Shown piece after piece: positions 1-56,314 of a stretch of 64,000 nucleotides of DNA. The position numbers and the translations under genes are program-made. The stretch covers positions 154,401 through 218,400 of IMG/VR virus record IMGVR_UViG_3300032285_004054; one strand, 5' to 3'. The number at the start of each line of letters is the position of its first letter. Position 1 is the stretch's first letter. A model generated the notes under the pieces. It was not told the DNA's origin. It made no database searches and saw only the letters and a list, made by a program, of their open reading frames with translations.

Positions 1-589
1 CTTGACCTACTAAACAGTAGAGAGATTTAGGAAATAACCCACCTTCTATTTTCTCATCAAGAAACTTCCAACCTGTAGGAATAGGGTTATATATGGTGGT
101 TAGCTCTTTAATATGTTCATCAATATCGTCAAAATACCAATGACCTAAATTCTCTGTTAAACTTATATTATAAGCTTTTTCAAATTGTTGTAAGATTTCT
201 GCAGTGTCAGCTTTACCTTGTGCAAACTTATCTGCAGTATCAACAATAGTGTTATACAGACAACGCTCTTTTAAGAAATGCTCTGTATTAGCAAGCAATT
301 CGTCTCGATTAAACTTATTATCGATACGCTTTAACTTATCTGCTACCTCGTTAAACGCTCTCTTCTCTTCATCAGAAGTTAAGCGAGTTTTAATTTCAGT
401 GTGATTAGGTACTGCACCTCTTTCGGTAAAGAAAGAGGTTACTACCTTAAAAATAGTAGCGATATTTTTATCACTAAAATACGTAGGATCTACGTATTCT
501 ATAATAGTAGAGAGATATTCCTGACTTACTAACGAATTATATAGAATGATATTTTCGTAATAGTCAAGGTCGAGTTTGCTATTAGACAT
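1..589 (-). CDS. 41: Replicative DNA helicase, T4 gp41/DnaB-like (5' part; runs off window)
   Basis: Manual translation MSNSKLDLDYYENIILYNSL...PIPTGWKFLDEKIEGGLFPKSLYCLVGQV reaches the Walker A at the window edge; TAATG overlap with the uvsX stop. Confidence 0.88.
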   Translation of the reverse strand, partial: MSNSKLDLDYYENIILYNSLVSQEYLSTIIEYVDPTYFSDKNIATIFKVVTSFFTERGAVPNHTEIKTRLTSDEEKRAFNEVADKLKRIDNKFNRDELLANTEHFLKERCLYNTIVDTADKFAQGKADTAEILQQFEKAYNISLTENLGHWYFDDIDEHIKELTTIYNPIPTGWKFLDEKIEGGLFPKSLYCLVGQ

Positions 590-1695
590 TAGCTATCGAT
601 ATTATCGACTTCCTCTTCGAGATCTACTGTAGAACTCGTACCGTAACAAAGTTTTTCTTGAAGAGCCTTTTCAATGTCTGGCATAATCTTTTCCCAGAAT
701 TTAGCATCCTTTTCAAGATCTTTACGGTAACCAAGGCTTTCACCTTTATACAAAACAGTACGACCTGGCTTCTCAATAACTCCAAAAGCTTCTGCAATCT
801 CAAAAAGACCAGCATGCTTATCAAGACCTGTCTTAAAGTTGAGATACAACTCAGTTTTAAGGTAAGAAGGCACAAAGCGGTTTTTTACTGTTAATGCACC
901 TAGTGTAACACCTGAGATGTTGTGAGCAATAGCTACAGACTCTTCATTTGGATTATCACTCGCTTTTTCATTACGGGTGCTAAGTTGTACAAGCACAGAA
1001 GCAAGATAGATCGGGCCTTTACCACCGCTCTGTGTTTTAACAAGTGTCGGAAACATTTCCATGCCTTCATAGATATGGTTACTAAAGAGAATAGGTACTT
1101 TAGCTTTAGCAGCTTTATACGTAAGAATACGCATCATTGATTTAATAGCTTTTGCTCTTTGTCCTACATCTGCTGCATCCTTACCGGCTGCGGAATCTTT
1201 AATTTCTTTAGCACTAGCTAGATTACCTAGTGAATCAATAGCTACAATAAATTTTAAATCGGGGTTATTAGCCTTGATAACGTTATCAAGGAATGCGCAC
1301 ATTTGATTACGACAATCTTCAATTGTCTCAACAGGGTAATACTTAACTCGGGAAGTATCCATACCAGCGCCTTCAGCACTTTTCTTATCTACGGCAACCT
1401 CAGAGTCCCAAATAACAGGGATATAACCTTTCTTCTGAGCGTTAGCCATAATCTTATTCATAATAAGGGTTTTGCCAGCCATCGAGGGACCAGCAAAACC
1501 CGTAATACGTCCTCCAGGTATACCTTTATACATGGAGCCTGAAATAATAGCATTTAAGGCAAAAGACCCTGTATCGATCCAATCTTCTGCAGTTGATAGA
1601 GTTGCAGCATCGAGTACTGCAGCGTCTGGATTTAAATCATCAACAGATTTAAAAATATCTTTTAAATTCGAGAGGTCGTTTTTGTCTTTTGCCAT
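589..1695 (-). CDS. uvsX: RecA-like recombinase UvsX
   Basis: DTGSFALNAIISG, Walker A GPSMAGKT, IDSLGNL; T4-like context. Confidence 0.95.
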   Translation of the reverse strand: MAKDKNDLSNLKDIFKSVDDLNPDAAVLDAATLSTAEDWIDTGSFALNAIISGSMYKGIPGGRITGFAGPSMAGKTLIMNKIMANAQKKGYIPVIWDSEVAVDKKSAEGAGMDTSRVKYYPVETIEDCRNQMCAFLDNVIKANNPDLKFIVAIDSLGNLASAKEIKDSAAGKDAADVGQRAKAIKSMMRILTYKAAKAKVPILFSNHIYEGMEMFPTLVKTQSGGKGPIYLASVLVQLSTRNEKASDNPNEESVAIAHNISGVTLGALTVKNRFVPSYLKTELYLNFKTGLDKHAGLFEIAEAFGVIEKPGRTVLYKGESLGYRKDLEKDAKFWEKIMPDIEKALQEKLCYGTSSTVDLEEEVDNIDS

Positions 1696-14387: not shown

Positions 14388-15435
14388 TTGTTTGTTGTGA
14401 TATTTTATATAGTTCTAAGCATTTATCTAGTATACTTCTTTTATCTACATCAGTTGTTAATAAATTAACAAATTCTTGTAACGCTGTTTCAATGTCGAAA
14501 CTTAAATTTTCTAATTCTTCTCCTTCAACTTGTTTTTCTTCTAAGAGATTAAATTCAGTTCTTAAAGAGAGAGGTTTATACTGCGATATTTTTGTAATAA
14601 TAGAATCAATATGTTGAGCGGTTAATTTGTTATCAACATAAAGACTAACTATATTGTTTCTTACTATCTCCTCAACATTCTTTATAGAACCGTCAAATAT
14701 TTTTGCAGTATTAATTCTCTTATGCTTAGGTGAAAATGTATTTTCAATAAATTCAACATCTAGCGTATCTACATCTAATATCGAAACACCTTTTTGTTGA
14801 TCTCTGTCTCCAAAATCTAACTCATGAGGTGAACCTAGATATAATATACTTTTACCACCAGGGTAGAACCTATGCTCTCTAAAATGAAAATGACCTGATA
14901 TAACTAAATCAGCCTTATCATGTAAAAAGGTATTTTCAAAACCATGCTCACATACTTTATGTTGGTTCATTCTAAAATTAATAATATCAAAATGTCCAAC
15001 TATAACATCACACTTAGGTATACTCTTAGCTTCAGTACCCCAAGGGCAAAATGTAAATGATTTATCTCTAATTTTAAAATTACGTAACTCTTCAAAAACT
15101 GTTACGTTCTTATTATTAAGAATAGAAATCGAATTAACGTCAGATTTATCTTTATAGAAGCAATCATGATTACCAGTTATTGCTACAATATTAAAATCTT
15201 CTAATATATTAAAAAATCTATTCGCAGCATGTATTGTGTTAACACCAATTAAATGTCTATCATGAAAGATATCTCCTGCAATAATAATATCTTTAATATT
15301 GCGTTCAAGTAATGTCGATTTTAACCAATAAGCAAATTTGATAGCTATATCATGCCAGGTCTGCGAGTTTTGATGTACACCTAAGTGTATATCACTTATA
15401 CAGGCTATTTTTGGACCTGTGATATTATTCATCAT
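14380..15435 (-). CDS. 47: Recombination nuclease gp47 (SbcD/Mre11-like)
   Basis: SDIHLG, GDIFH, GNHD, SGHFH metallophosphoesterase motifs. Confidence 0.95.
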   Translation of the reverse strand: MMNNITGPKIACISDIHLGVHQNSQTWHDIAIKFAYWLKSTLLERNIKDIIIAGDIFHDRHLIGVNTIHAANRFFNILEDFNIVAITGNHDCFYKDKSDVNSISILNNKNVTVFEELRNFKIRDKSFTFCPWGTEAKSIPKCDVIVGHFDIINFRMNQHKVCEHGFENTFLHDKADLVISGHFHFREHRFYPGGKSILYLGSPHELDFGDRDQQKGVSILDVDTLDVEFIENTFSPKHKRINTAKIFDGSIKNVEEIVRNNIVSLYVDNKLTAQHIDSIITKISQYKPLSLRTEFNLLEEKQVEGEELENLSFDIETALQEFVNLLTTDVDKRSILDKCLELYKISQQTNE

Positions 15436-15985
15436 TTGTTGCTAGTGAATCGTCATAGTGATCACTACCGTCATCTTCTCTGTGAGCATTTTTCTGATAG
15501 GGTATCTGACCACTCTCTGCTAGTAGTTCATAAACTTCATTTTGATATCTATGAATAGTTTCATGTTCTTTCTTTTCTTTTTTAATTCTATTTTGAAATG
15601 CTCTATAAGCTACTTTTGTAAAGTAAGAAAAAGGATTATACCCGCTATCACACTTAAATCTCTTTCTAGTTAAAGCAGTCATCATCTTAATGATCGCGTC
15701 CCCAATCATTTCTTCCTTATATGAATAGTTAATAAAGTTCTGTGCGTACCCTAGACGTGTACCGATCTTTTGAATCATGTCGGCTAGTTCATTCTTAAGA
15801 TCGTTAGTTTTGTAGTACTCCTTTATAAGATTTTCCATCTCAATCGGGTCAACGTAATTTGGCTTAAGCTCTTCTTTAGTACGTCTGACTCTCTTCTTAC
15901 CTTTTGTAATAGCTTTATCGTCTAGTATTTCATCTAGATCTGGCTCTTCGAATCCGACGAACGCATCTTTTTGTTTTTTAATCAT
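15425..15985 (-). CDS. 55: Late-transcription sigma factor gp55
   Basis: NFINYSYKEEMIGDAI, NPFSYFT, FQNRIKKEKK. Confidence 0.92.
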   Translation of the reverse strand: MIKKQKDAFVGFEEPDLDEILDDKAITKGKKRVRRTKEELKPNYVDPIEMENLIKEYYKTNDLKNELADMIQKIGTRLGYAQNFINYSYKEEMIGDAIIKMMTALTRKRFKCDSGYNPFSYFTKVAYRAFQNRIKKEKKEHETIHRYQNEVYELLAESGQIPYQKNAHREDDGSDHYDDSLATNDE

Positions 15986-16021: not shown

Positions 16022-17470
16022 TCAACTCTCCAGTAGCTCTTTTACAGTAAAATCTATACTTTCATTTGTGTATAGTTCTATTCTTTCCTGTAAATGAGAA
16101 TTACCGTAACGTAGATTATCTCCTATATCAAAAATTGTAGCACGTTTTTTATTAGCGTGTAGACGAAGACTTCTACCTATGGATTGAATAATTTTTATCC
16201 TAGCTTTTCCAATAGCTGCAAACACAACATAGTGTAAGTTTTTAATATTAATACCGGTACTAAAAATTTTAGATATAGCAATACATACGATATTGTCGCT
16301 TGTCTCCATAAGTTCGCGTATTTTTTCTCTTTCATCTACCTCTACACCTCCATGTACAAAATAAACCATTTTATTAGTATTATTATAAAGTACGTTGTGT
16401 AGTTCTTCACCATGTGCGATACGATCAACCATAATGAGAATATTGTTTGATACACCATTAACGAGTTTAGTTATTACCTCATTACGAAATTTATTAGTTT
16501 GTAAAAATTGTATTTCTTCCTCATACCCTGCGGTAGGGTTAGACATAGACGGTGTTGTGAATGCAGGTAGATTTCTATAGTGTAACTTAAGTACAGCAAC
16601 AGTAACGTCGGTTATATATTTTTGTTCTCTTAAATCTATCGACTTCTTTGTGTATATAATCTTACCTATCTTACCAAAAATATTCCATTGGTCCATTTTA
16701 TTGTCGGGTAATGTACCTGTTAAACCGTAGCGAAACTTAGCAGGTATCTTGTCGATAACTTTATTTACTTTATTACCATGTTTAATCTTATGTACCTCAT
16801 CAACAATAAGAAGGTCTATATCTTTAAGAGCTGATAAATCTTGTTTTTCAGATTGTAATATCTGAGCATTTGAAATAATAATTGAAGCGTTTGGATCTGG
16901 TTCATTACTACCTGTCCATTTTGTTACACTACTTTCTGGTATTCCGTACTCAATAAAATCACTAGATGTCTGAGTAGCTAACTGTAGATCAGGTACTAAA
17001 ATTAATGTTTTACATTTATTAACTTGCTCCTGTATTGTACTAACAAGAGTAGCCATAACAAGAGTTTTACCTGCTGACGTAGGTAGAATTATAACACCAC
17101 CTCTATTTTTTATAGCTGCTTTAATAGTTTCTTCCTGATAATCTCTTAATGGTAGATTAAGTTTTGCAATTTTATCCTCAAATAAAAAAGGCGGTTCGTA
17201 CGCTTTCTTAAAAGCGTCACTTATTGTGATATCAAATTTAATTTCTAAACTTTGTAGATATTCAATTATTGTTGGTGCTAATCTAATCTCAAATCTACCT
17301 TGAGGTGTAATTACGTATTGTCTTGTTGAGGGACGATAACCTACTGCAAAACGTCTCTTAAAAGCTTGGTTTTTATCTTCAACAGAAAAATATTCTCTTA
17401 TGTTAGGTAGATAATCAGTTGTAATTACACCCTTCTTTCTACCAAAATCATAATCAAATAAAACCTTCAT
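16022..17470 (-). CDS. uvsW: SF2 helicase UvsW
   Basis: LRDYQ, PTSAGKT, DEVH, QSIGRSLR. Confidence 0.94.
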   Translation of the reverse strand: MKVLFDYDFGRKKGVITTDYLPNIREYFSVEDKNQAFKRRFAVGYRPSTRQYVITPQGRFEIRLAPTIIEYLQSLEIKFDITISDAFKKAYEPPFLFEDKIAKLNLPLRDYQEETIKAAIKNRGGVIILPTSAGKTLVMATLVSTIQEQVNKCKTLILVPDLQLATQTSSDFIEYGIPESSVTKWTGSNEPDPNASIIISNAQILQSEKQDLSALKDIDLLIVDEVHKIKHGNKVNKVIDKIPAKFRYGLTGTLPDNKMDQWNIFGKIGKIIYTKKSIDLREQKYITDVTVAVLKLHYRNLPAFTTPSMSNPTAGYEEEIQFLQTNKFRNEVITKLVNGVSNNILIMVDRIAHGEELHNVLYNNTNKMVYFVHGGVEVDEREKIRELMETSDNIVCIAISKIFSTGINIKNLHYVVFAAIGKARIKIIQSIGRSLRLHANKKRATIFDIGDNLRYGNSHLQERIELYTNESIDFTVKELLES

Positions 17471-17883
17471 TATGTTGTTTCAAGCTTAATAATTTCTATT
17501 AAGTTTTTTATATCGTAACTAACACTTCTAAAATTTGTTTCAACTTTACCTAGATACTCGACAAGTAATTCATTTTCTGCTATCTGATGATCTATTTTTG
17601 TAATAATTTCGTGATTGCTAGCTGCAATTTCCGCAGTCTTAGCAGTTATACCGACGGGTGATTCAGCTTTCATTTTTTCGCTAATTTTAGCGAGAGCTTG
17701 TTGGCGTAACTTGTTTAGCTTTATAACTTCCTGTTTATGGAACATAAGCCTACCAACCCAGTAATGTCTCGTAGCAGGTAGGTCTAACTGAACTTGCTTC
17801 ATATTAAATTCATCAAGAGCGATCGATTTTTTAATCGCTTCCTCGTATGTCTGTAAAAGAGAGATAGTACTTTCCTGTTCCAT
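17470..17883 (-). CDS. uvsY: Recombination mediator UvsY
   Basis: 137 aa helical ORF from ATG 17883 (track starts at an upstream GTG); YDIKNLIE C-terminus; adjacent to uvsW. Confidence 0.8.
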   Translation of the reverse strand: MEQESTISLLQTYEEAIKKSIALDEFNMKQVQLDLPATRHYWVGRLMFHKQEVIKLNKLRQQALAKISEKMKAESPVGITAKTAEIAASNHEIITKIDHQIAENELLVEYLGKVETNFRSVSYDIKNLIEIIKLETT

Positions 17884-17931
17884 CTCATTAATAATATGTG
17901 CTTTTAACCTTTTTACCACTAAATATTATAT

Positions 17932-38541: not shown

Positions 38542-38550
38542 ATATTATAT

Positions 38551-38772: not shown

Positions 38773-39203
38773 CCGCCTTGCTGTGCTGCCTTCATATATG
38801 AATGAAGTTGTTCGATATCCTTAGGTATAGCTTTTTTAATAACTTCAGGAATTGGTTTACTTAATAACAATAATGATTGTGCGTAATCTTTAGCTGTATC
38901 TCTATCTTTTGAAATAGCTATAATTTCGTGTGTAGTAAGTTGAGCACCATTTATATATTTACGATACGCTCTTTCAGCGTCATAACGTGTATTATCTTCT
39001 TTTGGTGTGTGAGGTTTGGCAACTTCTTCTGTTTCACCTGGACCTCTAGGGTTAGGCTCTTCAGGGTTTCCAGCAGGTCTAGCTTTAGCAGGATGTGCTA
39101 AACCTAATGAAGCAGCCATGGCTGCAGTTGCCATAGCTTTTGAAAAAGGTCCTTCTTGAACCAATTCATATGCTTCTGTTATTTTTTGTATATCTTTACT
39201 CAT
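38769..39203 (-). CDS. Putative internal virion protein
   Basis: KITEAYELVQEG followed by hydrophobic MATAAMAASLGLA. Confidence 0.55.
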   Translation of the reverse strand: MSKDIQKITEAYELVQEGPFSKAMATAAMAASLGLAHPAKARPAGNPEEPNPRGPGETEEVAKPHTPKEDNTRYDAERAYRKYINGAQLTTHEIIAISKDRDTAKDYAQSLLLLSKPIPEVIKKAIPKDIEQLHSYMKAAQQGG

Positions 39204-39204
39204 A

Positions 39205-39459
39205 TTAATCTTTATTTACTACGCTGTCAAAACCTGCACTCCAGAGATCAGCAGCTTTTTTATTACCGCCTTTATGAGGATTTTCAGGCATAACACCATC
39301 TCTGAGATATCTTCTTCCAGCTAAAGCGCCATGGGCAAAATGATCAGATGCATCTGAGGCTGCGTGATAATCAGTAGGAGTTCTTGACATAAGTTTTTCG
39401 TATTCTTGTCTACTAATAGTATCGTATGCTTCGTTTAAAGCGGTTTCGAATTTCGACAT
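39205..39459 (-). CDS. Putative internal virion protein
   Basis: MSKFETALNEAY; TAAATA 6 nt upstream. Confidence 0.6.
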   Translation of the reverse strand: MSKFETALNEAYDTISRQEYEKLMSRTPTDYHAASDASDHFAHGALAGRRYLRDGVMPENPHKGGNKKAADLWSAGFDSVVNKD

Positions 39460-39809: not shown

Positions 39810-40775
39810 TTACGTTATAGCATCAATTAATCCACCGAAATTTTCTTCGGTCTCCGGATCAATTATACCTTTTAGTAAATCAGATTCTATTGGATAAAGA
39901 TCATTATACTCGACTACATATTTTTCACTTTTATCTTTAGCAAAATCAGGCTCAACAAGAGCTTGTCGTACGCGATGTCTTGCCCAAGGACTCATTTCCA
40001 CAGCTGGTTTAATGTATGTAGCAAGTTCACCTTTCCATAAATTATCTCTATCACTTCTTAAACAAACTCTATCTCCCTCTTTAAGGTTGTTTCTCCATGT
40101 TTCTAAATCAAAATCCTTACTCTCTGTAACACTTAGTAAATCACTAAATGAATCTTTAGTATCTTTTGTTAATGACTTTCTTAATTCCCAATCAATAGGA
40201 AATAATTTACTTAGATTGTATCTAGTATAGCCTTGAGAGCCATCTATATTGTGACCTTCTTTAACAAGTAAAGCAATATCTCTAAAACTATCAACTACTT
40301 CTAAATATGTAGCTTTAAATCCACGGACAGTAAAAGGTCTAACTTCTACCTTATCGCCTTTCTTTAAGTTACTTCGCCAAGTTCTAAGATATTCGTAATC
40401 CTCTTGAGTCTCTTCTGATACTATATCGATTAAATCGCTAAATGAATTTTCTGTATCCTTAGATAGAGAGTTCTTTAATTCATATTTTTTTAAAGCTTTT
40501 TGTACTTTATCGGTTACAACCTTTCTAACTGTATAGTAACTATCAGGTACATGTAAGCTTCTATACCATTCATCAAAATCTTTCATATGAACAAACCAAC
40601 CATTACCTGATTTAGCATCTCTAGTCCATATAGCAGGTTTTCCGTCTATAATAATATCCCAACAAGGATTCCACATCTGACCTCCCATTAAGGTTTCAAA
40701 AGGACCCTTAACAATCTCTACTTTAAGATCATTAGCTCTTCTTAATTCCTCTAATATAAGATCATTAAATCTCAC
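39810..40775 (-). CDS. Tail-family member: three-module fusion
   Basis: MRFNDLILEE start; tails KYELKNSLSKDTENSFSDLIDI, DWELRKSLTKDTKDSFSDLLSV, IDPETEENFGGLIDAIT. Confidence 0.85.
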   Translation of the reverse strand: MRFNDLILEELRRANDLKVEIVKGPFETLMGGQMWNPCWDIIIDGKPAIWTRDAKSGNGWFVHMKDFDEWYRSLHVPDSYYTVRKVVTDKVQKALKKYELKNSLSKDTENSFSDLIDIVSEETQEDYEYLRTWRSNLKKGDKVEVRPFTVRGFKATYLEVVDSFRDIALLVKEGHNIDGSQGYTRYNLSKLFPIDWELRKSLTKDTKDSFSDLLSVTESKDFDLETWRNNLKEGDRVCLRSDRDNLWKGELATYIKPAVEMSPWARHRVRQALVEPDFAKDKSEKYVVEYNDLYPIESDLLKGIIDPETEENFGGLIDAIT

Positions 40776-40914: not shown

Positions 40915-41199
40915 TTAAAGAATATCTAATAGATCTCCGAACGTCTCGCCTGTCTCCTTGGACAGATGCCGCTTTATATTATGATCTTCTATAGCTTTGG
41001 CAATAGCGTTCTTTACTCCTTGCTTCTTATAGAGTTCAAGTCCCCAAACAGTGAGGTATTGGTTAGTCTCCAAATATCTAAAACCATCTGGCTCCTCGCC
41101 TATTGTTAACTTCTGGCCATCTACCTCCACGTCATAGCCTATATAGCCTTCGTCCTTAAGGTCGTAAGGACCTCTTAAGAATTTTACTTTATAAGACAT
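40915..41199 (-). CDS. Tail-family member
   Basis: Ends HLSKETGETFGDLLDIL. Confidence 0.85.
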   Translation of the reverse strand: MSYKVKFLRGPYDLKDEGYIGYDVEVDGQKLTIGEEPDGFRYLETNQYLTVWGLELYKKQGVKNAIAKAIEDHNIKRHLSKETGETFGDLLDIL

Positions 41200-41542
41200 C
41201 TAAGAACCCTCCGAATGAATCTCTTGTTTCTGGAGACATAGCTTGAAGTGTCTCCCAATTCTTAATAGCTTTAGCTACCGGACCGTTTTCAGTATCTTTT
41301 CCATCCCAAAGGTAAATCTCTGGCATATAAAGAACATAAGGGTATTCACCACGTTCTGGAGTATAAATGACAAAACTATTTCGATCTTCCGTATCCTCTT
41401 TAATATGCATTAACCAGGCACCTTCTATATCTTCGGGAAGTGTATAGCCTCGCTTTAGATACTCATTGATCTCTTCATCGGTAGCCCTTCTTAGGACTTT
41501 ATAGAAGTTACCAGACTCTAGAAAGAACTTGTTAAAGGACAT
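41189..41542 (-). CDS. Tail-family member
   Basis: MSFNKFFLES ... MSPETRDSFGGFLDVL. Confidence 0.85.
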   Translation of the reverse strand: MSFNKFFLESGNFYKVLRRATDEEINEYLKRGYTLPEDIEGAWLMHIKEDTEDRNSFVIYTPERGEYPYVLYMPEIYLWDGKDTENGPVAKAIKNWETLQAMSPETRDSFGGFLDVL

Positions 41543-41906
41543 CTAATAAACCTCCAAATGAATCTTTAGTTTCTTTGTCTACACTATTTAAAAGATTATA
41601 ATCTTCTATAGCCTTGTCTATTTGTTCTCTAAACGGATCATCATAGACGTCGGTATGATTGGGGATAATCTTAGGATAGGGAGGTAGCCAATGCCCTCTA
41701 TAATGACCTGGTGGCCAGCAGTAATAGCATATGCACTCCTTGTCCTTATACTTCATTTGTAGCTTATAGACATTCTCTTCCCAATCTTTTATATCCAGCT
41801 CATTACGAAAGAGATGGGTCATTGGTCCCTCAAGTATCTTTACTTCAATTCCTCTATTATCACCGTAATTGATAAGAGCTTCTTTTATTAATCGATCAAA
41901 GTACAT
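41532..41906 (-). CDS. Tail-family member
   Basis: MYFDRLIKEA ... VDKETKDSFGGLLDVL. Confidence 0.85.
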   Translation of the reverse strand: MYFDRLIKEALINYGDNRGIEVKILEGPMTHLFRNELDIKDWEENVYKLQMKYKDKECICYYCWPPGHYRGHWLPPYPKIIPNHTDVYDDPFREQIDKAIEDYNLLNSVDKETKDSFGGLLDVL

Positions 41907-42312
41907 CTAATAATCCTCCAAATGAATCTCTTGTATCTTTACTTAATCCTTGCTTAAAATTCCATTGATCTATAAGAGCTGGAACTGTTTCACGTAACAT
42001 CTTATTAAGGAATTGAGCTCTCGGGGCTGACTTGTGTTGTCTACCGACCATACGTTTAAACCAAGTAGGTGTTTGAATAACAGTATAATAAGCTGTTGTC
42101 TTCTGAAGCTCTCTATCTTTATCCTCTATCTTCTTAACCCACCAAGTACCTCCTTTACTATCCTTTAAACAAAAGACCTCTTTATAGTCTTTATGTGGAG
42201 GTTGTTCAAGATGAAGCTCACCAGTAAGACTATCCATAAAGCCGGTACCTACAACCTTAAATGTTGTATTCATCCAGTCCAGTTCTTCTAATACTAATTG
42301 ATTAAAGTACAT
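41896..42312 (-). CDS. Tail-family member
   Basis: MYFNQLVLEE ... LSKDTRDSFGGLLDVL. Confidence 0.85.
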   Translation of the reverse strand: MYFNQLVLEELDWMNTTFKVVGTGFMDSLTGELHLEQPPHKDYKEVFCLKDSKGGTWWVKKIEDKDRELQKTTAYYTVIQTPTWFKRMVGRQHKSAPRAQFLNKMLRETVPALIDQWNFKQGLSKDTRDSFGGLLDVL

Positions 42313-42664
42313 CTAATAATCCTCCGAATGTTTTCTTTGTATCATTACTTAATAGCTTTCTAAACTCCCAATCATTAATAGCATCAGGAACTAACCCGGA
42401 GAACCCCATAAAGGTTACATCTCCGCTATCATGAATGTTGTAGCTAGTATATCCTTCCTTCTCGTTATCTTTAAACCGTACAACAAGACGCGGCCAATAC
42501 CCAGGTCTATTACCATCATCGTCTACCACCCAGGCACCTTTTATATACTCTTCCCTTACCCAGCGATAGCCATAACCGTATATCCTCTGAAGATCTTCTT
42601 CTGTAGCGTCCCGAACGACGTGATACTTCTCTAAAGCTTCTAATACTATTTGATTAAAGTACAT
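42302..42664 (-). CDS. Tail-family member
   Basis: MYFNQIVLEA ... LSNDTKKTFGGLLDVL. Confidence 0.85.
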   Translation of the reverse strand: MYFNQIVLEALEKYHVVRDATEEDLQRIYGYGYRWVREEYIKGAWVVDDDGNRPGYWPRLVVRFKDNEKEGYTSYNIHDSGDVTFMGFSGLVPDAINDWEFRKLLSNDTKKTFGGLLDVL

Positions 42665-42995
42665 CTAATAATCCTCCGAAAGTTTCTCTTGTATCCTTTG
42701 ATAAGGATTGTTTTAATTCCCAATCTTTCATAGCTTTAATAATAAGGCTATCAAGTGTATCAATATCAATACCGAATAGCTTTTTACATTGATCTCGTTC
42801 ATATACAGCATTATCCGGATCAATTCCTGAAGTATTTAAACCATCGAGATAAAGCATACATTGATCATCTTTGACATAACGAAAGAAACACTTCTTACCA
42901 TTTACAGTTATATTATAATGAAGGTCTCCGATAGCCCAATCTGGAAGATCTTTGTCTTCTATAACATTAATAATCTTAATAGAAGGTTGTTTCAT
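42654..42995 (-). CDS. Tail-family member (no N-terminal CTS)
   Basis: Ends DWELKQSLSKDTRETFGGLLDVL. Confidence 0.85.
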   Translation of the reverse strand: MKQPSIKIINVIEDKDLPDWAIGDLHYNITVNGKKCFFRYVKDDQCMLYLDGLNTSGIDPDNAVYERDQCKKLFGIDIDTLDSLIIKAMKDWELKQSLSKDTRETFGGLLDVL

Positions 42996-43003
42996 ATAGG
43001 CTA

Positions 43004-43540
43004 TTAGAGGGCGTCTAGGAAGTCCTTAAATGATCCTTGAGTCTTAGTATCGGTTTGTCCTAGAGCTAAGAAGTTCTTTTCTTTATGTTTTATCCACCAG
43101 TTTACTAGCTTATCTAGCTTCTCGGCAAATGCGTAATGATAACCTTTCTGCCTCCATACTGGATCCTCTGTATTATTATCATAATGAACGAAGTAACTTA
43201 TATATGGATATAAAACATTCGGTACCCAAGAGGCAGCTGCAGCAATATGGGTAGGTCCTGTTTCATCTTCAAGTCTTCTAGTATCATCAATACAAGTCAT
43301 ATAATATGTCTTTGTATCTGTCCATGTAGCAAGCTCCCTAGTCTTATGTAATATACCATTAGGTTCAGCCTCCTTCGGTAGTCCTTCTTTAATGTCATAT
43401 ATCTCAAAGTTATGAAAGGGCATTGAATCAACCTCATCCGTTGACCAGACCGATCGTTCAAAGCCTTGCTTTCTATCGGGGTTTCTTGATCGAGGTACAT
43501 TAGCTACTAGAGCCTCTTTGAAGTAATCTTTAAATGACAT
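43004..43540 (-). CDS. Tail-family member
   Basis: MSFKDYFKEA ... TDTKTQGSFKDFLDAL. Confidence 0.8.
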   Translation of the reverse strand: MSFKDYFKEALVANVPRSRNPDRKQGFERSVWSTDEVDSMPFHNFEIYDIKEGLPKEAEPNGILHKTRELATWTDTKTYYMTCIDDTRRLEDETGPTHIAAAASWVPNVLYPYISYFVHYDNNTEDPVWRQKGYHYAFAEKLDKLVNWWIKHKEKNFLALGQTDTKTQGSFKDFLDAL

Positions 43541-43877
43541 CGATTAAACCTCCAAATGATTGTTCAGTATCCTTTGATAGATTGTTTTTTAATTCCCAAG
43601 ATATAAGCTGTTTGTATATAGGAAAGTCCGGATAGATATACCCTTCAAAGCCATAATTAGGTAAGCTATACACCATTAAGTTTTCATTGTTAAGATCTTC
43701 AAATAAGTCCTTACAACGTATGACTAGAACATCAGATACATCGGTATAGTTTCTAATTACCCATCCTCTAGTTAATTTTAAATCCTCATCATATTGAGAA
43801 GATAAACCATCGAGTATTTTCTGAGGAGCTAATTCTATCTTCTCCTTCTTTGATTCGTAGAATAACTTAAATGACAT
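43530..43877 (-). CDS. Tail-family member
   Basis: MSFKLFYES ... LSKDTEQSFGGLIDVI. Confidence 0.85.
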   Translation of the reverse strand: MSFKLFYESKKEKIELAPQKILDGLSSQYDEDLKLTRGWVIRNYTDVSDVLVIRCKDLFEDLNNENLMVYSLPNYGFEGYIYPDFPIYKQLISWELKNNLSKDTEQSFGGLIDVI

Positions 43878-44265
43878 CTAGTAGCCCTCCGAAAGTATCT
43901 CTTGTCTTATCTGGTAGATGCCTCCTTTGTTCAAAGTCATCTATAGCCTTAACTACTCTCCTACCTTCTTCTCTATAGGCTGGTATATCCCGCTCGGTAA
44001 AGGCACCACATCTATCCATACCTTCTAAAGTATAAACATCATAACCTTTTACATACGTAATAGATCTTATAGCAATATATCTAGCAATATATCTATCAGT
44101 TCCTGATTCCTTCTTTATAGTAAGAAGATAGAGAGGGTCATCTTTTCTCCAAGGATACTTCCTACGAAAGACCCCCTCATACCCCTCAGGCACTGCTTCT
44201 ACAGTTATATTATCTCTTTGAAGCTTATAAGGCTCTTTAGATTCGTAGAATAACTTAAATGACAT
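43867..44265 (-). CDS. Tail-family member
   Basis: MSFKLFYES ... LPDKTRDTFGGLLDVI. Confidence 0.85.
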   Translation of the reverse strand: MSFKLFYESKEPYKLQRDNITVEAVPEGYEGVFRRKYPWRKDDPLYLLTIKKESGTDRYIARYIAIRSITYVKGYDVYTLEGMDRCGAFTERDIPAYREEGRRVVKAIDDFEQRRHLPDKTRDTFGGLLDVI

Positions 44266-44608
44266 CTAATAGACCTCCAAATGAATCTTTAGTATCGTCT
44301 GATAGATTATTTTTAAACTCCCATTTCTTAATAGCTTTAGCAAGAGGTGAGTTTATATCCTCATGACTAATAAGGTCAATAGTGTTAGGGTCTAATGTGT
44401 AAATTGAATATGTCTTCCAGTCAGGAATATATGCTACAATAACCTGTCCTTCATCATAGTCATCGTTCATATAAACGATCCATGCCTGTTCAATATCTCC
44501 CTTCTCCGTATCAAGATCTCTTGTAAGATCTTTAAGTTCTTTCTTTGTAAATCTTCTAAGAACTTTGTATGAGTCGTTTGACTCTGTAAAAAATTGTTTA
44601 AATGACAT
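44255..44608 (-). CDS. Tail-family member (first in the array)
   Basis: MSFKQFFTES ... LSDDTKDSFGGLLDVI. Confidence 0.85.
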   Translation of the reverse strand: MSFKQFFTESNDSYKVLRRFTKKELKDLTRDLDTEKGDIEQAWIVYMNDDYDEGQVIVAYIPDWKTYSIYTLDPNTIDLISHEDINSPLAKAIKKWEFKNNLSDDTKDSFGGLLDVI

Positions 44609-44628: not shown

Positions 44629-44823
44629 TTATTTAAGAGTCTTTATTTCATTCCCTATCTCTACTATATACTCACCTATCTTAGACATGCCGAGCTCCTT
44701 GGTTAGGCTCTGCTTCTCCCTTAGTATTCTAACGATAGTCTCTAGCTTACCTAGATAGTCTTCTAATGTAAGCCCGGATAGATCTTCCTTTAGATAGCCT
44801 GATACAATTTCATTAAACTTCAT
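44629..44823 (-). CDS. Small late protein with CTS-like N-terminus
   Basis: MKFNEIVSGYLKED; TAAATA 7 nt upstream. Confidence 0.6.
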   Translation of the reverse strand: MKFNEIVSGYLKEDLSGLTLEDYLGKLETIVRILREKQSLTKELGMSKIGEYIVEIGNEIKTLK

Positions 44824-45854: not shown

Positions 45855-46025
45855 CCCTCTAGGATTATACCTACAACTAGAGGGTATTAATTTGTTTGAC
45901 CGGGGTGGTTAATCCATCCTGATGCACCGGTTGATAAAGGCCTTTTAGAGCAACCTAGTCACGCGCACGTACGGTAGCTCTTTCGATCGAGCCTGCGAAC
46001 GGTCAAAATGTTTTAAAGGCCTAAG
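45855..46025. ncRNA. Candidate structured non-coding RNA
   Basis: GC-rich and ORF-free; TTTGACCG/CGGTCAAA closing helix plus internal stems. Confidence 0.4.
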
Positions 46026-46043
46026 CCATCATAGTCCTCCATA

Positions 46044-46247
46044 TTAATATCGTCCATGTCTCTTATCATAGGTAGCAAAAGGATCAGAGTCTACAATGGT
46101 TACCAGGACCCAGGCCGCTATACAATTCCAAAAGGTATAATGAATATTGGTATGGAATAGATAATTGATTGCCCAGATACCGAGCCAGATGTCTAGAACT
46201 CGATAGATGATATAGTAGATGCCTCGTACTAGTTCGTTCCGTTCCAT
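46044..46247 (-). CDS. Small membrane protein
   Basis: Likely start MERNELVRG; two hydrophobic segments. Confidence 0.5.
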   Translation of the reverse strand: MERNELVRGIYYIIYRVLDIWLGIWAINYLFHTNIHYTFWNCIAAWVLVTIVDSDPFATYDKRHGRY

Positions 46248-46412
46248 ATTACTTCCTCTTCTTACCTGCGTCCGATCGTTGGGCACGATAGGCTCCTACC
46301 TTAGATCCCTTTGGTACTCCGGCCGATAGTTGAGTACGAAGATACTTGGCCGTATTATAACGAACCAATGATCCACCTTTACAGATTTTGTTCTTTGTTG
46401 TTGCCATACAGA

Positions 46413-46986: not shown

Positions 46987-47026
46987 ACGAGTATTATGAA
47001 TGCTTTGGTTGGAACCGGCAACTACT

Positions 47027-47155: not shown

Positions 47156-47196
47156 ACTACTAATAGTAGAAGCTTATAGAGGCACCTGCAAGTATC

Positions 47197-52982: not shown

Positions 52983-53288
52983 TTAAATGATACCCAAGAG
53001 ACCTTCAAATGAGTCTTTTGTTTCCGGTGATAGATTCTTCATTATATTATATCTCTCTATCGCCTTTAATCCTTCTTCTTCTATATCTTTGAATATATTA
53101 ACCGATGTTGCCAGCCCCAGTAATGGCTTATATTTTGTTGGTACCTTTAAGAACGCTAGATATGATCTCTTTTTACCTTTTTCTAAAACAAATTGCCAGG
53201 TATTACCTTCATTATCTTTCATCTCATACCCTGGTTCCCTTCTCTTTCCTACTATCTTATACTCTACATCTGTAAATGTTAATGACAT
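52983..53288 (-). CDS. Tail-family member
   Basis: Ends RYNIMKNLSPETKDSFEGLLGII. Confidence 0.8.
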   Translation of the reverse strand: MSLTFTDVEYKIVGKRREPGYEMKDNEGNTWQFVLEKGKKRSYLAFLKVPTKYKPLLGLATSVNIFKDIEEEGLKAIERYNIMKNLSPETKDSFEGLLGII

Positions 53289-53432: not shown

Positions 53433-53786
53433 TTATACAACATCAATAAAGCTACCGAACGTTTCTTTTGTATCATCGGACATATGCTTTTCTAATTCAA
53501 ATCTATTATATTCCTTTTTTACTAGATCTCTAATATACTTTTCTAGTTCCTTACGATCTGGAGATAATGTATCTTTTGATATCCCAGGGATCTTACTACT
53601 CAATGAATAGCCTATATCCTTATCAAATCCATCATTTGTCCCATAGATACCCATCTTCTCACCATTTATATAAACATCGGCTAGTACCGTCCATATCTTA
53701 GAACTAGTACTGGGACGAATCTTTACAGCAATATCCAATCCTGCAAAGCCTTCATTGAGTATACTCTCTACTAGATCCTGGAACAT
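53433..53786 (-). CDS. Tail-family member
   Basis: MFQDLVESILNEG ... MSDDTKETFGSFIDVV. Confidence 0.8.
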   Translation of the reverse strand: MFQDLVESILNEGFAGLDIAVKIRPSTSSKIWTVLADVYINGEKMGIYGTNDGFDKDIGYSLSSKIPGISKDTLSPDRKELEKYIRDLVKKEYNRFELEKHMSDDTKETFGSFIDVV

Positions 53787-53811: not shown

Positions 53812-54222
53812 ATGTCATTTAGTCAATTAGTTCTGGAAACCCTAGATGAATACCGAGTCATCGGGGATGCCTCCCATCATGCTATCAATATGGCTATGCG
53901 GTACTTTACCGCCGGGATCAAGGATACTGATAAGATCTTCACCCAACCTATTGAACATGGATGGCTTTTGAATGTACGAGGGGATAAGATTTATGTATTC
54001 CCTAATTACTTTATAGGTATGATGGATCCAGGTGATTCAGATTACGTCGTCTTTAATGATCAATATAACTTCATTAACCGTTCAACCAATCGTGTTAATA
54101 ATCCAAAGGGAGTTATTGATAATAGAAAGATAAAGAAAGCGATTGAGAATTGGGAGATGCTTAAGTCAGTATCCCCAGATACTAAATCCTCATTCGAAGA
54201 CTTATTAGGTACTATATCCTAA
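53812..54222 (+). CDS. Tail-family member
   Basis: MSFSQLVLET ... NWEMLKSVSPDTKSSFEDLLGTIS. Confidence 0.8.
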   Translation: MSFSQLVLETLDEYRVIGDASHHAINMAMRYFTAGIKDTDKIFTQPIEHGWLLNVRGDKIYVFPNYFIGMMDPGDSDYVVFNDQYNFINRSTNRVNNPKGVIDNRKIKKAIENWEMLKSVSPDTKSSFEDLLGTIS

Positions 54223-55336: not shown

Positions 55337-55612
55337 TCACAGAATTCCCACAAAATCCTGGAAATTCTCCTGTGTTTTCTCTGATAATTCCTTAATAATA
55401 CTATAGTTTTTCGGGAACATTTTACAGATTTCCGCTACTTGATCCCTGTCTGTTGAACCATCCTGGTAACGAACATCTATCTTACACATTAAACTACTAG
55501 GGAATATAGTTTGCATTTCCGTTACTTGTACGGTCATAATTCTTCCGTCATAGTAATAATCAAACCAGTCCCCAGGCTTGAGATTACTAACAAATGATAG
55601 GTTATCGAACAT
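55337..55612 (-). CDS. Tail-family member under an early-type promoter
   Basis: Ends LSEKTQENFQDFVGIL; TTGAAC-17-TAGTAT-6-ATG. Confidence 0.7.
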   Translation of the reverse strand: MFDNLSFVSNLKPGDWFDYYYDGRIMTVQVTEMQTIFPSSLMCKIDVRYQDGSTDRDQVAEICKMFPKNYSIIKELSEKTQENFQDFVGIL

Positions 55613-55667: not shown

Positions 55668-55991
55668 ATGAACTTCGAGGATCTTGTTGTAGAGGCTATA
55701 CATAACAAATATGTTAAGTTTGATATAGAGATTCTTAGTGGTCCTTACCCTGGTGAACATTACGGGTGGTTGGAAGAGTGTCAAGTATACAAAGCAAGAA
55801 TTTTTGATAATACAAACGTTCAATTAATCTATCAACCGAGTAGGGATTATGTTGGTGCGAAGAATTTTGACGTCTGGTGGTTTGGTCGGGAGGCTGGATT
55901 TGACGAACAGGCCAAAGCAGCTATAATAAAATACAATATGTCAAAGGAAGCTAAGGGATCATTTGGTGACTTCTTAGACGCCATATCATGA
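55668..55991 (+). CDS. Tail-family member
   Basis: MNFEDLVVEA ... MSKEAKGSFGDFLDAIS. Confidence 0.8.
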   Translation: MNFEDLVVEAIHNKYVKFDIEILSGPYPGEHYGWLEECQVYKARIFDNTNVQLIYQPSRDYVGAKNFDVWWFGREAGFDEQAKAAIIKYNMSKEAKGSFGDFLDAIS

Positions 55992-56314
55992 GCTTAAACG
56001 TAGAAATAATTCCCAGAAGAACGTACGATACAAGTTACGGATTCAAGCGTTACAGTTGTAAGATATCCGGATCTGTAGACGGAATTGATATCAATAATGC
56101 ACTACCTTGGCAGAAAGGTGTCTTCCAAGTAGAAATATGGCATAATGGCTCCTGTCGACTACCTGCTTTAGATCAAGTTCCAGAGATTCCCTACCCTAAA
56201 ACCTATCACAAGTTTTGTGCTGAAGTTAAGAAAGCTATTGAAGACCAGGAGCTAATATCCTCACTATCGCCGGAAACAGGCGATGCTTTCAAAGACCTTA
56301 TTAGTATAACTTAG
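55988..56314 (+). CDS. Tail-family member
   Basis: Ends LSPETGDAFKDLISIT. Confidence 0.78.
   Translation: MSLNVEIIPRRTYDTSYGFKRYSCKISGSVDGIDINNALPWQKGVFQVEIWHNGSCRLPALDQVPEIPYPKTYHKFCAEVKKAIEDQELISSLSPETGDAFKDLISIT

What the first reader, a model, noticed from the sequence alone, without database searches (positions are those of the whole stretch)
41189..44290. Dual-frame junction repeat: one ~30-45 bp element is tail, ribosome-binding site, start and capsid-targeting peptide at once
Seen: eight junctions overlap by exactly 11 bp. For example, TTT GGA GGA TTA TTA GAT GTA CTT TAA reads FGGLLDVL* in the upstream gene, supplies GGAGG 8 nt before an ATG, and reads ATG TAC TTT AAT (MYFN) in the next gene. 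Exact repeats: 31 nt (42298-42328 = 42650-42680) and 29 nt (43852-43880 = 44240-44268). Most other genes in the window lack a Shine-Dalgarno. Inference: each core is a plug-in cassette, and any crossover within the junction regenerates an in-frame, translationally coupled, capsid-targeted gene. UvsX/UvsY or single-strand annealing could therefore shuffle, delete or add cassettes with no integrase, an integron-like array built from overlapping codes. The tail persists with different codons where no gene overlaps (39810, 40915, 52983, 55988), so it is selected as protein and not only as an RBS.
Basis: partly seen in the sequence, partly recalled or inferred. Interest (0 to 1): 0.82.

Follow-up and report, generated by a model that had tools for sequence, protein, structure and literature searches.

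The report
Overlap-linked gene cassette array, T4-like phage
A distant lake-water relative of phage T4 carries rows of small, mostly unrelated genes that all end in the same short protein tail; the DNA of that tail also holds the ribosome site and start codon of the next gene, and these repeated joints are where whole genes have been gained, lost and reordered between related phages.

Summary
Ten tandem genes (44608 to 40915) are joined at eight places by an 11-nt overlap (GAT GTM NTT TAA / ATG...). GGAGG lies 8 nt before each ATG, and both exact repeats are as stated. The window holds 17 members and the same contig a second array; no Pfam, PHROG or GenBank-phage match. Lake-metagenome relatives carry arrays of up to 16 genes with the same overlap (tail ...LIDEL*, next gene MNF...). 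The tail is selected as protein: it survives, with other codons, where nothing overlaps. Where a gene overlaps, synonymous sites are tuned for translation (GGA/GAG, AT-rich codons, GAT). Where none does, GAC replaces GAT. A second joint type embeds the stop in TATAAATA, the T4 late-promoter consensus. Other genes in this genome show no Shine-Dalgarno signal. Core order differs between genomes, and single-cassette indels have breakpoints in the joint. The longest exact repeats usually flank one cassette. Tails are genome-specific. The closest precedents are PeSL shuffling and the T4 internal-protein loci. Capsid targeting is only an analogy: the N-leader and the relatives' tail both fit the T4 targeting-sequence pattern. 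No live variants were found. New variant of a known kind.

The parts
44255..44608 (-). K, first gene of the main array (117 aa; core type 1). It has its own AAGGAG 8 nt upstream and a TAAATA box at -27 (44630-44635).
   Evidence: AlphaFold model
43867..44265 (-). J (132 aa). This cassette is absent between the K and I orthologues of L002 and is flanked by the 29-nt exact repeat.
43530..43877 (-). I (115 aa; core type 13). L002 and L022 carry orthologues with clearly similar cores (L002 about 78% nucleotide identity) but different, genome-specific tails.
43004..43540 (-). H (178 aa), divergent tail SFKDFLDAL. The next gene starts 8 nt after its stop, so there is no overlap, no GGAGG, and GAC replaces GAT.
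42654..42995 (-). G (113 aa; core type 10), with no N-leader. Its orthologues in L001 and L003/L008 are likewise not overlapped by the upstream gene.
42302..42664 (-). F (120 aa; core type 1), flanked by the 31-nt exact repeat.
41896..42312 (-). E (138 aa; core type 3); stop is TGA.
   Evidence: AlphaFold model
41532..41906 (-). D (124 aa; core type 4). It carries an N-leader that its orthologues lack.
41189..41542 (-). C (117 aa; core type 1).
40915..41199 (-). B (94 aa; core type 7), last gene of the overlapped row. Tail TFGDLLDIL is written GAT ATT CTT TAA, so it contains no ATG.
39810..40775 (-). 321-aa ORF made of three family units fused in frame, with three tail motifs. GTG start, leader-like N-terminus (RFNDLILEE) and TAAATA at -13.
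42298..42328 (-). 31-nt exact direct repeat, copy 1 (E/F joint). Copy 2 is at 42650-42680 (F/G joint).
   Evidence: Logan unitigs break exactly here
43852..43880 (-). 29-nt exact direct repeat, copy 1 (I/J joint). Copy 2 is at 44240-44268 (J/K joint). It consists of the 11-nt overlap plus 18 nt of the leader MSFKLFYES.
52983..53288 (-). Scattered member (101 aa; core type 2), tail SFEGLLGII.
53433..53786 (-). Scattered member (117 aa). Its stop lies inside GTATAAATAG, with an ATG 9 nt after the stop (type-B joint, followed by the 43-aa ORF 53292-53423).
53812..54222 (+). Scattered member (136 aa; core type 1), leader MSFSQLVLE, TAAATA at -12.
55337..55612 (-). Scattered member (91 aa), tail NFQDFVGIL.
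55668..56314 (+). Two members (107 and 108 aa) joined by a 4-nt ATGA overlap. The first has leader MNFEDLVVE and TAAATA at -12.
589..1695 (-). UvsX-like recombinase: the phage's own homologous-recombination machinery.
   Evidence: Pfam RecA_N
17470..17919 (-). UvsY-like recombination mediator.
15425..15985 (-). gp55-like late sigma factor, which makes T4-type late promoters plausible here.

Best explanation
The region is a multigene family peculiar to a lake-water lineage of distant T4-like phages. Each gene has three parts. (i) An optional, flexible 9-residue N-leader, M-x-F-(K/N)-x-hydrophobic-hydrophobic-x-E. (ii) A variable folded core; about 40 sequence types were found and most show no detectable relation to one another. 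(iii) A conserved C-terminal helix plus flexible tail: ...W-E-x-K-x-x-L-S-x-x-T-x-x-S/T-F-x-x-L-L/I-D-V/E-L-stop.

Shown: the DNA of the last 15 or so codons is multi-purpose. In the common joint (type A), the Asp codon GAT and the next G form the ATG of the following gene, 11 nt before the stop. Upstream synonymous sites are tuned into a translation-initiation region (GGA/GAG giving GGAGG or GAGG, and AT-rich codons).

Inferred: the main array is a polycistronic, probably late, transcript from a TAAATA box upstream of K. Ribosomes finishing one cistron start the next. This would be needed because the other genes of this phage have no Shine-Dalgarno sequence and appear to be made from promoters that abut the ATG.

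Shown: in a second joint (type B), the last Leu codon, the stop and ATA spell TATAAATA, the T4 late-promoter consensus, with the next ATG 7-10 nt further on, and the Asp codon is GAC.

Shown by comparison, mechanism inferred: because every cassette ends and begins with the same 30-50 nt, homologous recombination between joints adds, deletes or reorders whole cassettes and always regenerates intact, expressed genes.

Inferred at lower confidence (about 0.35): the proteins are late-made cargo or effector proteins carried in the virion like T4 internal proteins. The leader, and perhaps the tail, would act as the targeting or processing signal. Whatever the partner, the tail is a genome-specific docking peptide.
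For: Anatomy and overlaps.

Family size and novelty: 17 ORFs and 19 tail motifs in the window; a second array of 5 in the same 218.4-kb contig (L004). No Pfam or PHROG family, no tblastn hit in 50,697 phage records. A profile search of 1.84 billion proteins found 62 representatives.

Same 11-nt overlap in relatives, with co-varying letters (DEL* = GAT GAA CTT TAA over ATG AAC TTT AA). 65 of 108 non-redundant tails are overlapped.

Protein-level selection of the tail: it is kept at array ends and on the other strand with different codons.

Nucleotide-level selection where overlapped: GGA/GAG 48/50 against 12/22 (p 5e-5); ATC 48/56 against 15/32 (p 2e-4); TTT, ACA and AAA enriched (p 0.003-0.009). 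Synonymous identity outside the overlap is 0.59-0.63 against 0.43-0.48. In non-overlapped tails GAC:GAT is 22:8 although the genome ratio is 247:956 (p 1e-9).

No general Shine-Dalgarno usage.

Type-B joint: 16 of 43 non-overlapped tails. T4 late consensus TATAAATA at -13 to -6: PMC1524935. TAAATA lies near -12 upstream of many window ORFs and of sheath, tube and baseplate genes of the same contig, but not of uvsX, gene 32 or the helicase gene. A gp55-like sigma factor is encoded.

Cassette turnover: core orders differ. J is absent in L002 with breakpoints inside the 29-nt repeat, and a type-6 cassette indel separates L002 from L022. The longest exact repeat is between adjacent joints in 6 of 9 loci, and adjacent joints share longer matches than non-adjacent ones (p 7e-5). 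Tail identity follows the genome, not the core (0.64 within against 0.52-0.54 between).

Recombination genes. T4-type recombination needs under 50 bp of homology (PMC2839356).

Leader and tail as signals: residues 1-9/10 and the extreme C-terminus have low pLDDT while the cores are confident. The leader is optional on orthologous cores. The strict leader is in 23/109 members against 3/275 other ORFs. The aromatic-x-x-hydrophobic-hydrophobic-x-E pattern of the T4 targeting sequence (MKTYQEFIAE; targeting residues 4 and 7, processing residues 8 and 10; PMC9026906, 10.1101/2021.01.19.427310) is in the last 9 residues of 85/87 relatives' members and 0/267 other ORFs.
Against: No direct evidence of expression, coupling, cleavage or packaging. 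Promoter and leaderless-mRNA readings are motif-based.

No population variant was seen: L005, from another sample, is identical over 9,378 nt. The only run holding the DNA is kept as contigs, which cannot show rare joints.

The relatives compared are fairly diverged (about 76-85% nucleotide identity in shared cassettes), so rearrangements may be old and rare.

Shine-Dalgarno matches are weaker or absent at many overlapped joints of relatives, so coupling may rely on reinitiation rather than GGAGG.

Against virion cargo: most members are acidic (median pI 5.2) whereas T4 internal proteins are described as basic (PMC9026906). There is no homology to T4 internal proteins. The window genome's tail lacks the Glu of the pattern (0/22). 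Only about 21% of members have the leader.

Cores might be very diverged paralogues rather than independent captures: a few clusters show weak profile similarity.
Confidence: 0.6

Rival explanations
1. This is an ordinary tandem paralogue family. One ancestral gene pair with an 11-nt overlap was duplicated many times, the cores diverged beyond recognition, and the termini stayed because they are functionally constrained. The joint has no special role in generating diversity, and rearrangements are incidental unequal crossovers.
For: Both models contain a beta-sheet plus C-terminal helices. Some core clusters show weak profile-profile similarity: 7-9, 2-3 and 4-7, probability 47-66%. The sibling contig is identical. 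No tail-less homologue of any core was found elsewhere.
Against: Most core pairs show no detectable similarity, and the secondary-structure order of the two models differs. Tails track the genome, not the core. The leader is present or absent on orthologous cores. The longest repeats flank single cassettes. This rival overlaps with the main explanation: unequal crossing-over at joints is the proposed mechanism.
Confidence: 0.25
2. The proteins are not virion cargo. They are intracellular takeover or anti-defence proteins, and the acidic-hydrophobic C-terminal tail docks them onto one hub protein of the phage or host, such as the sliding clamp. The N-leader is just an N-terminal helix.
For: The phage's own DNA polymerase ends ...QTDLFDLLS*. 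That is an acidic-hydrophobic C-terminus loosely like the family tail; from my own knowledge, T4-family polymerases bind the clamp through such tails. The family is acidic. Genome-specific tails fit co-evolution with one partner. The nearest language-model hit with a named family is an anti-Thoeris protein, but at chance level.
Against: The spacing of F and LL differs between the polymerase tail and the family tail. The gp55-like protein ends ...SLATNDE*, which is unlike the tail. Members carry late-promoter-like boxes. Leader and tail both fit the T4 targeting-sequence pattern.
Confidence: 0.3
3. The conserved 'tail' is kept only as nucleic-acid signal (ribosome site, start, promoter), and the protein sequence is a by-product.
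For: Strong synonymous-site constraints occur where a gene overlaps.
Against: The tail is kept with different codons where nothing follows or overlaps: at array ends, on the + strand, and inside the triple fusion. The conserved region extends about 30 residues upstream into a helix that packs on the core.
Confidence: 0.03
4. The joint is a programmed +1 frameshift site. At CTT TAA the ribosome slips to TTT AA., which is the frame of the next gene, and so makes fused poly-proteins.
For: CTT is the last codon in 36 of 65 overlapped tails. The downstream frame is +1. Natural in-frame fusions of two or three units exist: 39810-40775, and multi-stretch hits P0051, P0054, P0057 and P0062.
Against: Many joints end CTC, CTA, CTG, TTA or ATT, which cannot slip this way. 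GGAGG is 13 nt from the CTT codon, a spacing that suits initiation at the ATG; from my own knowledge, the prfB-type stimulator sits about 3 nt away. An ATG is conserved in every overlapped joint and avoided in non-overlapped ones.
Confidence: 0.05
5. It is a true integron-type system in which a site-specific recombinase acts on the joints.
For: Cassette-like array, a single upstream promoter-like box, and promoterless internal cassettes.
Against: The joints have no hairpin or inverted repeat: folding z-scores run from -0.55 to +1.19. None of the roughly 40 window and neighbouring ORFs scanned matched an integrase. Breakpoints lie in plain direct repeats.
Confidence: 0.03

Closest known systems
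PeSL cassettes (promoter-early stem-loops) of T4-like phages (Arbiol et al. 2010, PMC2839356; Comeau et al. 2014, PMC4122927)
   Same: Short conserved sequences are repeated between small non-essential genes in hyperplastic regions. Indels and replacements between related phages have breakpoints in the repeat. They act through the phage's own homologous recombination, bring their own expression signal, and were explicitly compared with integrons.
   Different: PeSLs are intergenic and consist of a sigma70-like early promoter plus a terminator stem-loop of about 100 bp. Here the repeat lies inside coding sequence (a C-terminal tail overlapping the next start), has no stem-loop, and carries a ribosome site and start codon or a late-promoter consensus. 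Mini-circles were not tested.
T4 internal proteins (IPI, IPII, IPIII) and their capsid targeting sequence; the hypervariable IP loci (PMC9026906, PMC3012670; Repoila 1994 as cited in PMC2839356)
   Same: Small diverse proteins share only a short terminal signal. The 9-10 residue N-terminal peptide has an aromatic residue, two hydrophobic residues and a Glu at matching spacing. The loci are plastic, flanked by repeated sequence, and lie near tRNA genes. The phage is T4-like and has a late-promoter-like motif.
   Different: There is no sequence homology. The family is mostly acidic. The defining feature here is a C-terminal tail, which T4 internal proteins lack. Only about a fifth of members have the leader. 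Cleavage and packaging are untested.
Translationally coupled overlapping cistrons (ATGA or longer overlaps) in bacterial and phage operons
   Same: The start codon lies inside the end of the upstream gene, with a purine-rich ribosome site in the upstream coding sequence.
   Different: The overlap is fixed at 11 nt and conserved across a whole family and several genomes, with co-variation of tail codons and the second and third residues of the next protein. It occurs in a genome that otherwise shows no Shine-Dalgarno signal.
Integron gene cassettes
   Same: An array of small diverse genes in one orientation, with a shared recombination site at each boundary and a common upstream promoter.
   Different: No integrase was seen, there is no attC-like hairpin, and the repeats are direct and coding. 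This is an analogy only.
C-terminal cargo-loading peptides of encapsulins (from my own knowledge, not tested)
   Same: A short conserved C-terminal peptide on otherwise unrelated proteins directs them into an HK97-fold shell.
   Different: There is no sequence relation and no evidence that the tail binds a capsid protein. This is a lead only.

Membership tests
T4-type internal proteins with capsid targeting sequence | N-terminal peptide of about 10 residues with targeting residues (aromatic at 4, hydrophobic at 7) and processing residues (hydrophobic at 8, Glu at 10) | tested here: inconclusive
   The pattern M-x-F-(K/N)-x-hydrophobic-hydrophobic-x-E is present in 23/109 members (8 of 10 in the main array) against 3/275 other ORFs. 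The same pattern lies in the last 9 residues of 85/87 relatives' members. This is a motif-level match only; the T4 rule is from PMC9026906.
T4-type internal proteins with capsid targeting sequence | Cleavage of the peptide by the gp21-type prohead protease | not testable with these tools
   The head module was not reached. Walking from the window start gave terminase, tube, sheath and baseplate genes only.
T4-type internal proteins with capsid targeting sequence | Packaged in the head in many copies and ejected with the DNA | not testable with these tools
   There is no isolate and no proteome.
T4-type internal proteins with capsid targeting sequence | Sequence or fold relation to IPI, IPII or IPIII | tested here: not met
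   No PHROG or Pfam hit. No PDB or viral fold match at E below 0.1.
T4-type internal proteins with capsid targeting sequence | Basic proteins | tested here: not met
   Median pI 5.2; 68% of members are below pI 6.
PeSL-type shuffling cassettes | Repeated conserved motif between small genes of a plastic region | tested here: met
PeSL-type shuffling cassettes | Motif consists of a sigma70-like early promoter plus a terminator stem-loop in intergenic DNA | tested here: not met
   The joints are coding and have no intergenic space. No structure beyond shuffled controls. The type-B joint carries a late, not an early, consensus.
PeSL-type shuffling cassettes | Indels or replacements between related phages with breakpoints in the motif | tested here: met
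   Window cassette J against L002, and L002 type-6 cassette against L022; adjacency of the longest repeats.
PeSL-type shuffling cassettes | Excised mini-circles during infection | not testable with these tools
   Only assembler contigs are available.
Integron | Tyrosine-recombinase integrase next to the array | tested here: inconclusive
   None of about 40 ORFs scanned against PHROGs matched an integrase. The small ORFs and the rest of the 218-kb contig were not scanned.
Integron | attC sites: imperfect inverted repeats that fold as hairpins | tested here: not met
   Eight joints folded; z-scores from -0.55 to +1.19.
Translationally coupled overlapping cistrons | Start codon within the upstream coding end, preceded by a ribosome site; nucleotide constraint beyond the protein's needs | tested here: met
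   Function was not assayed.

The most novel reading that the evidence does not exclude
A coding 'linker' of about 45 nt serves at once as four things: a protein docking or targeting tail, the translation-initiation region (or late promoter) of the next gene, the first residues of that gene, and the homology patch for recombination. This would give a lineage of lake T4-like phages an integrase-free, self-repairing cassette array from which a changing set of virion-delivered effector proteins is drawn. The tail would be a C-terminal counterpart of the T4 capsid targeting sequence.
Probability: 0.25. Interest if true: 0.85.

Novelty: new variant of a known kind. Interest (0 to 1): 0.62.

Why it matters
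Recombination at conserved linkers is already proposed to explain how T4-like phages renew their accessory genes, but the known linkers are intergenic regulatory cassettes. Here the linker is embedded in coding sequence and is read in two frames. It is constrained at once as peptide, ribosome site, start codon and, in a second form, late promoter. This is a clean natural example of layered codes whose constraints can be measured: overlapped and non-overlapped copies of the same peptide occur side by side. If the tail or leader really directs proteins into the capsid, the arrays would be a large, unexplored arsenal of injected proteins in uncultured freshwater phages. They would also offer a ready-made portable tag pair. 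Finally, the window shows a phage that apparently dispenses with Shine-Dalgarno sites except inside these operons.

Tried and rejected
- DNA search (megablast) of the array against GenBank phages: no match. tblastn of two members: no match.
- Pfam and PHROGs on ten members: only sub-threshold noise.
- Fold search of two confident models against PDB and BFVD: nothing below E 0.1. ESM Atlas: only unnamed viral clusters at lead-level scores.
Junction DNA patterns were used instead. Of the 19 metagenome loci, L011, L012, L017, L019, L021 and L025 held no member detected by the tail profile and were set aside as probable chance matches.
- Word-based homologue searches with the cores of H and of 52983-53288: only self hits, so no tail-less homologues are known.
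- Reads: only one run holds the DNA, as assembler contigs. Unitigs break at the 31-nt repeat, there are no joints, and depth is uninformative.
- Clamp-binding idea: the polymerase C-terminus is loosely similar but the gp55-like C-terminus is not. A scan of other C-termini gave nothing consistent.
- attC or PeSL-like hairpin at the joints: rejected.
- Gene conversion as the main cause of genome-specific tails: only a small within-genome excess of synonymous identity (0.63 against 0.59), so selection by a partner is the more likely cause.
- Walking along the contig to find the prohead protease and capsid genes: reached terminase, tube, sheath and baseplate genes only, then stopped.

Full report
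**What the window is.** The window is the last 64 kb of a 218.4-kb metagenomic viral contig. It encodes UvsX-, UvsY-, gp43-, gp46/47- and gp55-like proteins. Just outside it lie gp41-like, gp32, terminase, tail tube, sheath and baseplate genes. The DNA polymerase is at most 34% identical to that of any deposited phage. This is therefore a distant, uncultured T4-like phage. Relatives come largely from lake metagenomes, to judge by contig names such as the TBL_ (Trout Bog Lake) series.

**The observation.**
- Ten ORFs run head to tail from 44608 to 40915. Eight joints overlap by exactly 11 nt.
- In sense orientation a joint reads ...TTY GGA GGN YTN YTA GAT GTM NTT TAA. The ATG of the next gene is formed by the AT of the Asp codon GAT and the G that follows it.
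- GGAGG ends 8 nt before that ATG.
- The 31-nt and 29-nt exact repeats are correct and flank cassettes F and J.
- The 11-nt overlap is specific to this family: 8 of 9 family overlaps, against 1 of 26 overlaps among other neighbours.
- GGAGG is in 8/8 overlapped and 0/9 non-overlapped tails.
- The other 108 ORFs show no Shine-Dalgarno enrichment over random sequence.

**Extent of the family.** A motif scan and a tail profile find 17 ORFs in the window. They comprise the row of ten, a 321-aa in-frame fusion of three units (39810-40775) and six scattered members between 52983 and 56314 on both strands. Five more sit elsewhere in the contig (L004). No Pfam, PHROG or GenBank-phage relative exists. 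A profile search of 1.84 billion representatives gave 62 hits.

**Relatives.** Fetching their DNA showed arrays of up to 16 genes with the same 11-nt overlap. There the tail ends ...T-F-x-(D/E)-L-I-D-E-L*. It is written GAT GAA CTT TAA, and the next gene starts ATG AAC TTT AA (MNFK/N). The penultimate tail residue and the second residue of the next protein therefore co-vary: GTA with Tyr, GTC with Ser, GAA with Asn. Of 108 non-redundant tails, 65 are overlapped in this way.

**The layered code.** The tail is selected as protein. It persists at array ends, on the other strand and inside the fusion, with different codons. It also continues upstream into a conserved helix (K-A-I-x-x-W-E-x-K) that packs on the core in the models.

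On top of that, overlapped tails show nucleotide-level selection.
- The Gly/Glu codon before the start is GGA or GAG in 48/50 cases, against 12/22 in non-overlapped tails (p 5e-5), although GGT is the preferred Gly codon of the genome.
- The Ile codon before GATG is ATC in 48/56 against 15/32.
- Phe, Thr and Lys codons are shifted towards TTT, ACA and AAA.
- Synonymous identity outside the overlap is 0.59-0.63 for overlapped pairs and 0.43-0.48 for non-overlapped pairs.
- Conversely, non-overlapped tails write the Asp as GAC (22:8) in a genome that uses GAT 4:1 (p 1e-9). This removes the ATG.

The joint RNAs are not structured.

**A second joint type and the expression logic.** In 16 of 43 non-overlapped tails, including window 53433, the last Leu codon, the stop and ATA spell (C/T)TATAA(A/G)TA, with the next ATG 7-10 nt after the stop.

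TATAAATA at -13 to -6 is the T4 late-promoter consensus (PMC1524935). The window encodes a gp55-like sigma factor. In the window, TAAATA sits at about -12 from the ATG of at least 16 ORFs. In the same contig it precedes sheath, tube-like and baseplate genes but not uvsX, the helicase gene or gene 32, which instead have TATAAT-like boxes just before the ATG.

I infer the following.
- Most genes of this phage are transcribed from promoters that abut the start codon and give leaders of 0-3 nt. This fits the absence of Shine-Dalgarno sites.
- The main array has one such box 27 nt before K, followed by AAGGAG, and no box inside.
- Its internal cistrons therefore need the built-in ribosome site and start-stop overlap.

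This explains why GGAGG appears only here. It is inferred, not shown.

**Cassette behaviour.** With leader and tail removed, cores fall into about 40 BLAST clusters. Profile-profile comparison links only a few of them weakly. Two cores modelled with confidence (pLDDT 79) have different secondary-structure orders and no PDB or viral fold match.
- The same core types recur in different genomes in different orders.
- Between the window and L002, K and I are adjacent in L002 but separated by J in the window, and the alignment breakpoints fall inside the 29-nt repeat. Between L002 and L022, a type-6 cassette is present or absent with breakpoints at the stop and in the tail.
- In 6 of 9 loci the longest exact repeat is between adjacent joints, that is, flanking one cassette (27-49 nt in five of them, 21 nt in the sixth). 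Adjacent joints share longer matches overall (p 7e-5).
- Tail identity follows the genome (0.64) and not the core type (0.52-0.54). Yet synonymous identity is only slightly higher within genomes. The genome-specific tails therefore look like co-evolution with a partner, plus some local homogenisation.

T4-type recombination needs under 50 bp of homology (PMC2839356), and UvsX/UvsY are encoded here.

Against ongoing activity: a contig from another sample is identical over 9.4 kb. The single run holding the DNA is stored as contigs, which break at the 31-mer repeat and show no joints.

**What the proteins may do.** The leader (M-x-F-K/N-x-hydrophobic-hydrophobic-x-E, Glu at position 9) is a portable add-on.
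- It is present or absent on orthologous cores.
- It is disordered in both models.
- It is found in 23/109 members, against 3/275 other ORFs.
- After removal at the Glu, leader-bearing members of core types 1 and 3 would begin where their leaderless orthologues begin (read).

Its pattern matches the T4 capsid targeting sequence MKTYQEFIAE, in which residues 4 and 7 target and residues 8 and 10 direct processing (PMC9026906; 10.1101/2021.01.19.427310). The relatives' tail F-x-x-L-I-D-E-L fits the same pattern in 85/87 members and in 0/267 other ORFs. The window genome has Val in place of the Glu. Similar leaders head some non-family ORFs that carry late-type boxes, several of them basic (17932, 26409, 26749).

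This supports, but does not prove, a virion-cargo role. The acidity of the family, the lack of homology to T4 internal proteins, and the polymerase's loosely similar C-terminus keep a non-virion hub-docking role open.

**Comparison with known systems and verdict.** The nearest precedents are the PeSL cassettes of T4-like phages and the hypervariable internal-protein loci (PMC2839356, PMC4122927, PMC3012670). Conserved linkers there mediate modular shuffling and were already likened to integrons. The present system differs in three ways. The linker is coding and read in two frames. It carries translation or late-promoter signals rather than an early promoter and terminator. It also defines a new protein family with a C-terminal signature. 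It fails the defining tests for integrons (no hairpin, no integrase seen). It fails the tests for membership of the T4 internal-protein family by homology and by charge. I rate it a new variant of a known kind. The genetic architecture is well supported, the recombination role is supported by comparison only, and the capsid-targeting role remains a hypothesis.

Noticed in passing
window-wide, e.g. upstream of 17932+, 18620+, 19789+, 25399+, 30252+, 36592+, 38176-, 39205-, 44629-, 45468-, 53812+, 55668+, 56311-; also L028 structural genes: TAAATA sits about 12 nt before the ATG of many ORFs, and before sheath, tube and baseplate genes of the same contig. uvsX, the helicase gene and gene 32 lack it. 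This suggests T4-type late promoters abutting start codons, hence near-leaderless late mRNAs, in a genome with no Shine-Dalgarno signal.
   Followed up: partly
window 53433 (stop region); L008, L018, L022, L023 and L024 joints: Second joint type: the last Leu codon, TAA and ATA form (C/T)TATAA(A/G)TA, with the next ATG 7-10 nt after the stop (16 of 43 non-overlapped tails). The Asp codon is then GAC.
   Followed up: yes
window 46000-53000: A GC-richer island (0.43-0.46 against about 0.35) holds nine copies of a roughly 50-nt motif: GCTTGAnG, 17 nt, (C/T)ATA(A/C)T, 7 nt, then ATG AAA AAT AAG AAC. This looks like a sigma70-type promoter fused to a conserved MKNKN start, and so resembles a PeSL-like early cassette system. 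Homologous MKNKN genes occur in L024/L007.
   Followed up: partly
window 37779-39459 (-): Four paralogues share an N-terminal motif ...(L/I)-x-E-A-Y. Relatives are present next to the arrays in L024 and L009, so synteny is conserved.
   Followed up: no
L002 2140-2454: One family member has TGA exactly at the conserved Trp codon of K-x-W-E, and the tail continues in frame after it. This is either a TGG-to-TGA nonsense mutation or a recoded stop. It is a single case.
   Followed up: partly
window 39810-40775 (-): Three family units are fused in one frame, with tail motifs at residues about 110 and 210 and at the end. Multi-unit relatives of 237-461 aa exist in the protein library.
   Followed up: partly
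L004 1935-4139 (same 218.4-kb contig, outside the window): A second array of five members lies near two large Gly-rich, fibre-like ORFs (498 and 448 aa).
   Followed up: partly
window 30252-30437 (+); 17932-18198 (+); 26409-26747 (+): A basic 61-aa ORF ends ...SFDSVVASILGE. This is the same motif that other small basic ORFs carry at the N-terminus (MSLFDNIVNSILKE, MSNLFDKIISEILLE). The motif therefore seems able to work at either end of a protein.
   Followed up: no
window 5242-5280 (-): The DNA polymerase ends ...QTDLFDLLS*, an acidic-hydrophobic tail loosely like the family tail.
   Followed up: partly
window 36220-36314 (-): The tRNA-Ile (anticodon TAT) is called at 95 nt, unusually long. 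Two tRNA clusters (35407-36314 and 52122-52489) bracket the main array region.
   Followed up: no
window 2141-3070, 23214-24754, 54563-55129; L027/L028: Several queuosine/7-deazaguanine-pathway-like genes are present: QueF-like or GTP-cyclohydrolase-like, PTPS/QueD-like (twice), a radical-SAM-like ORF, and GCHY-1. With them are glycosyl- and methyltransferases. This hints at modified DNA.
   Followed up: no
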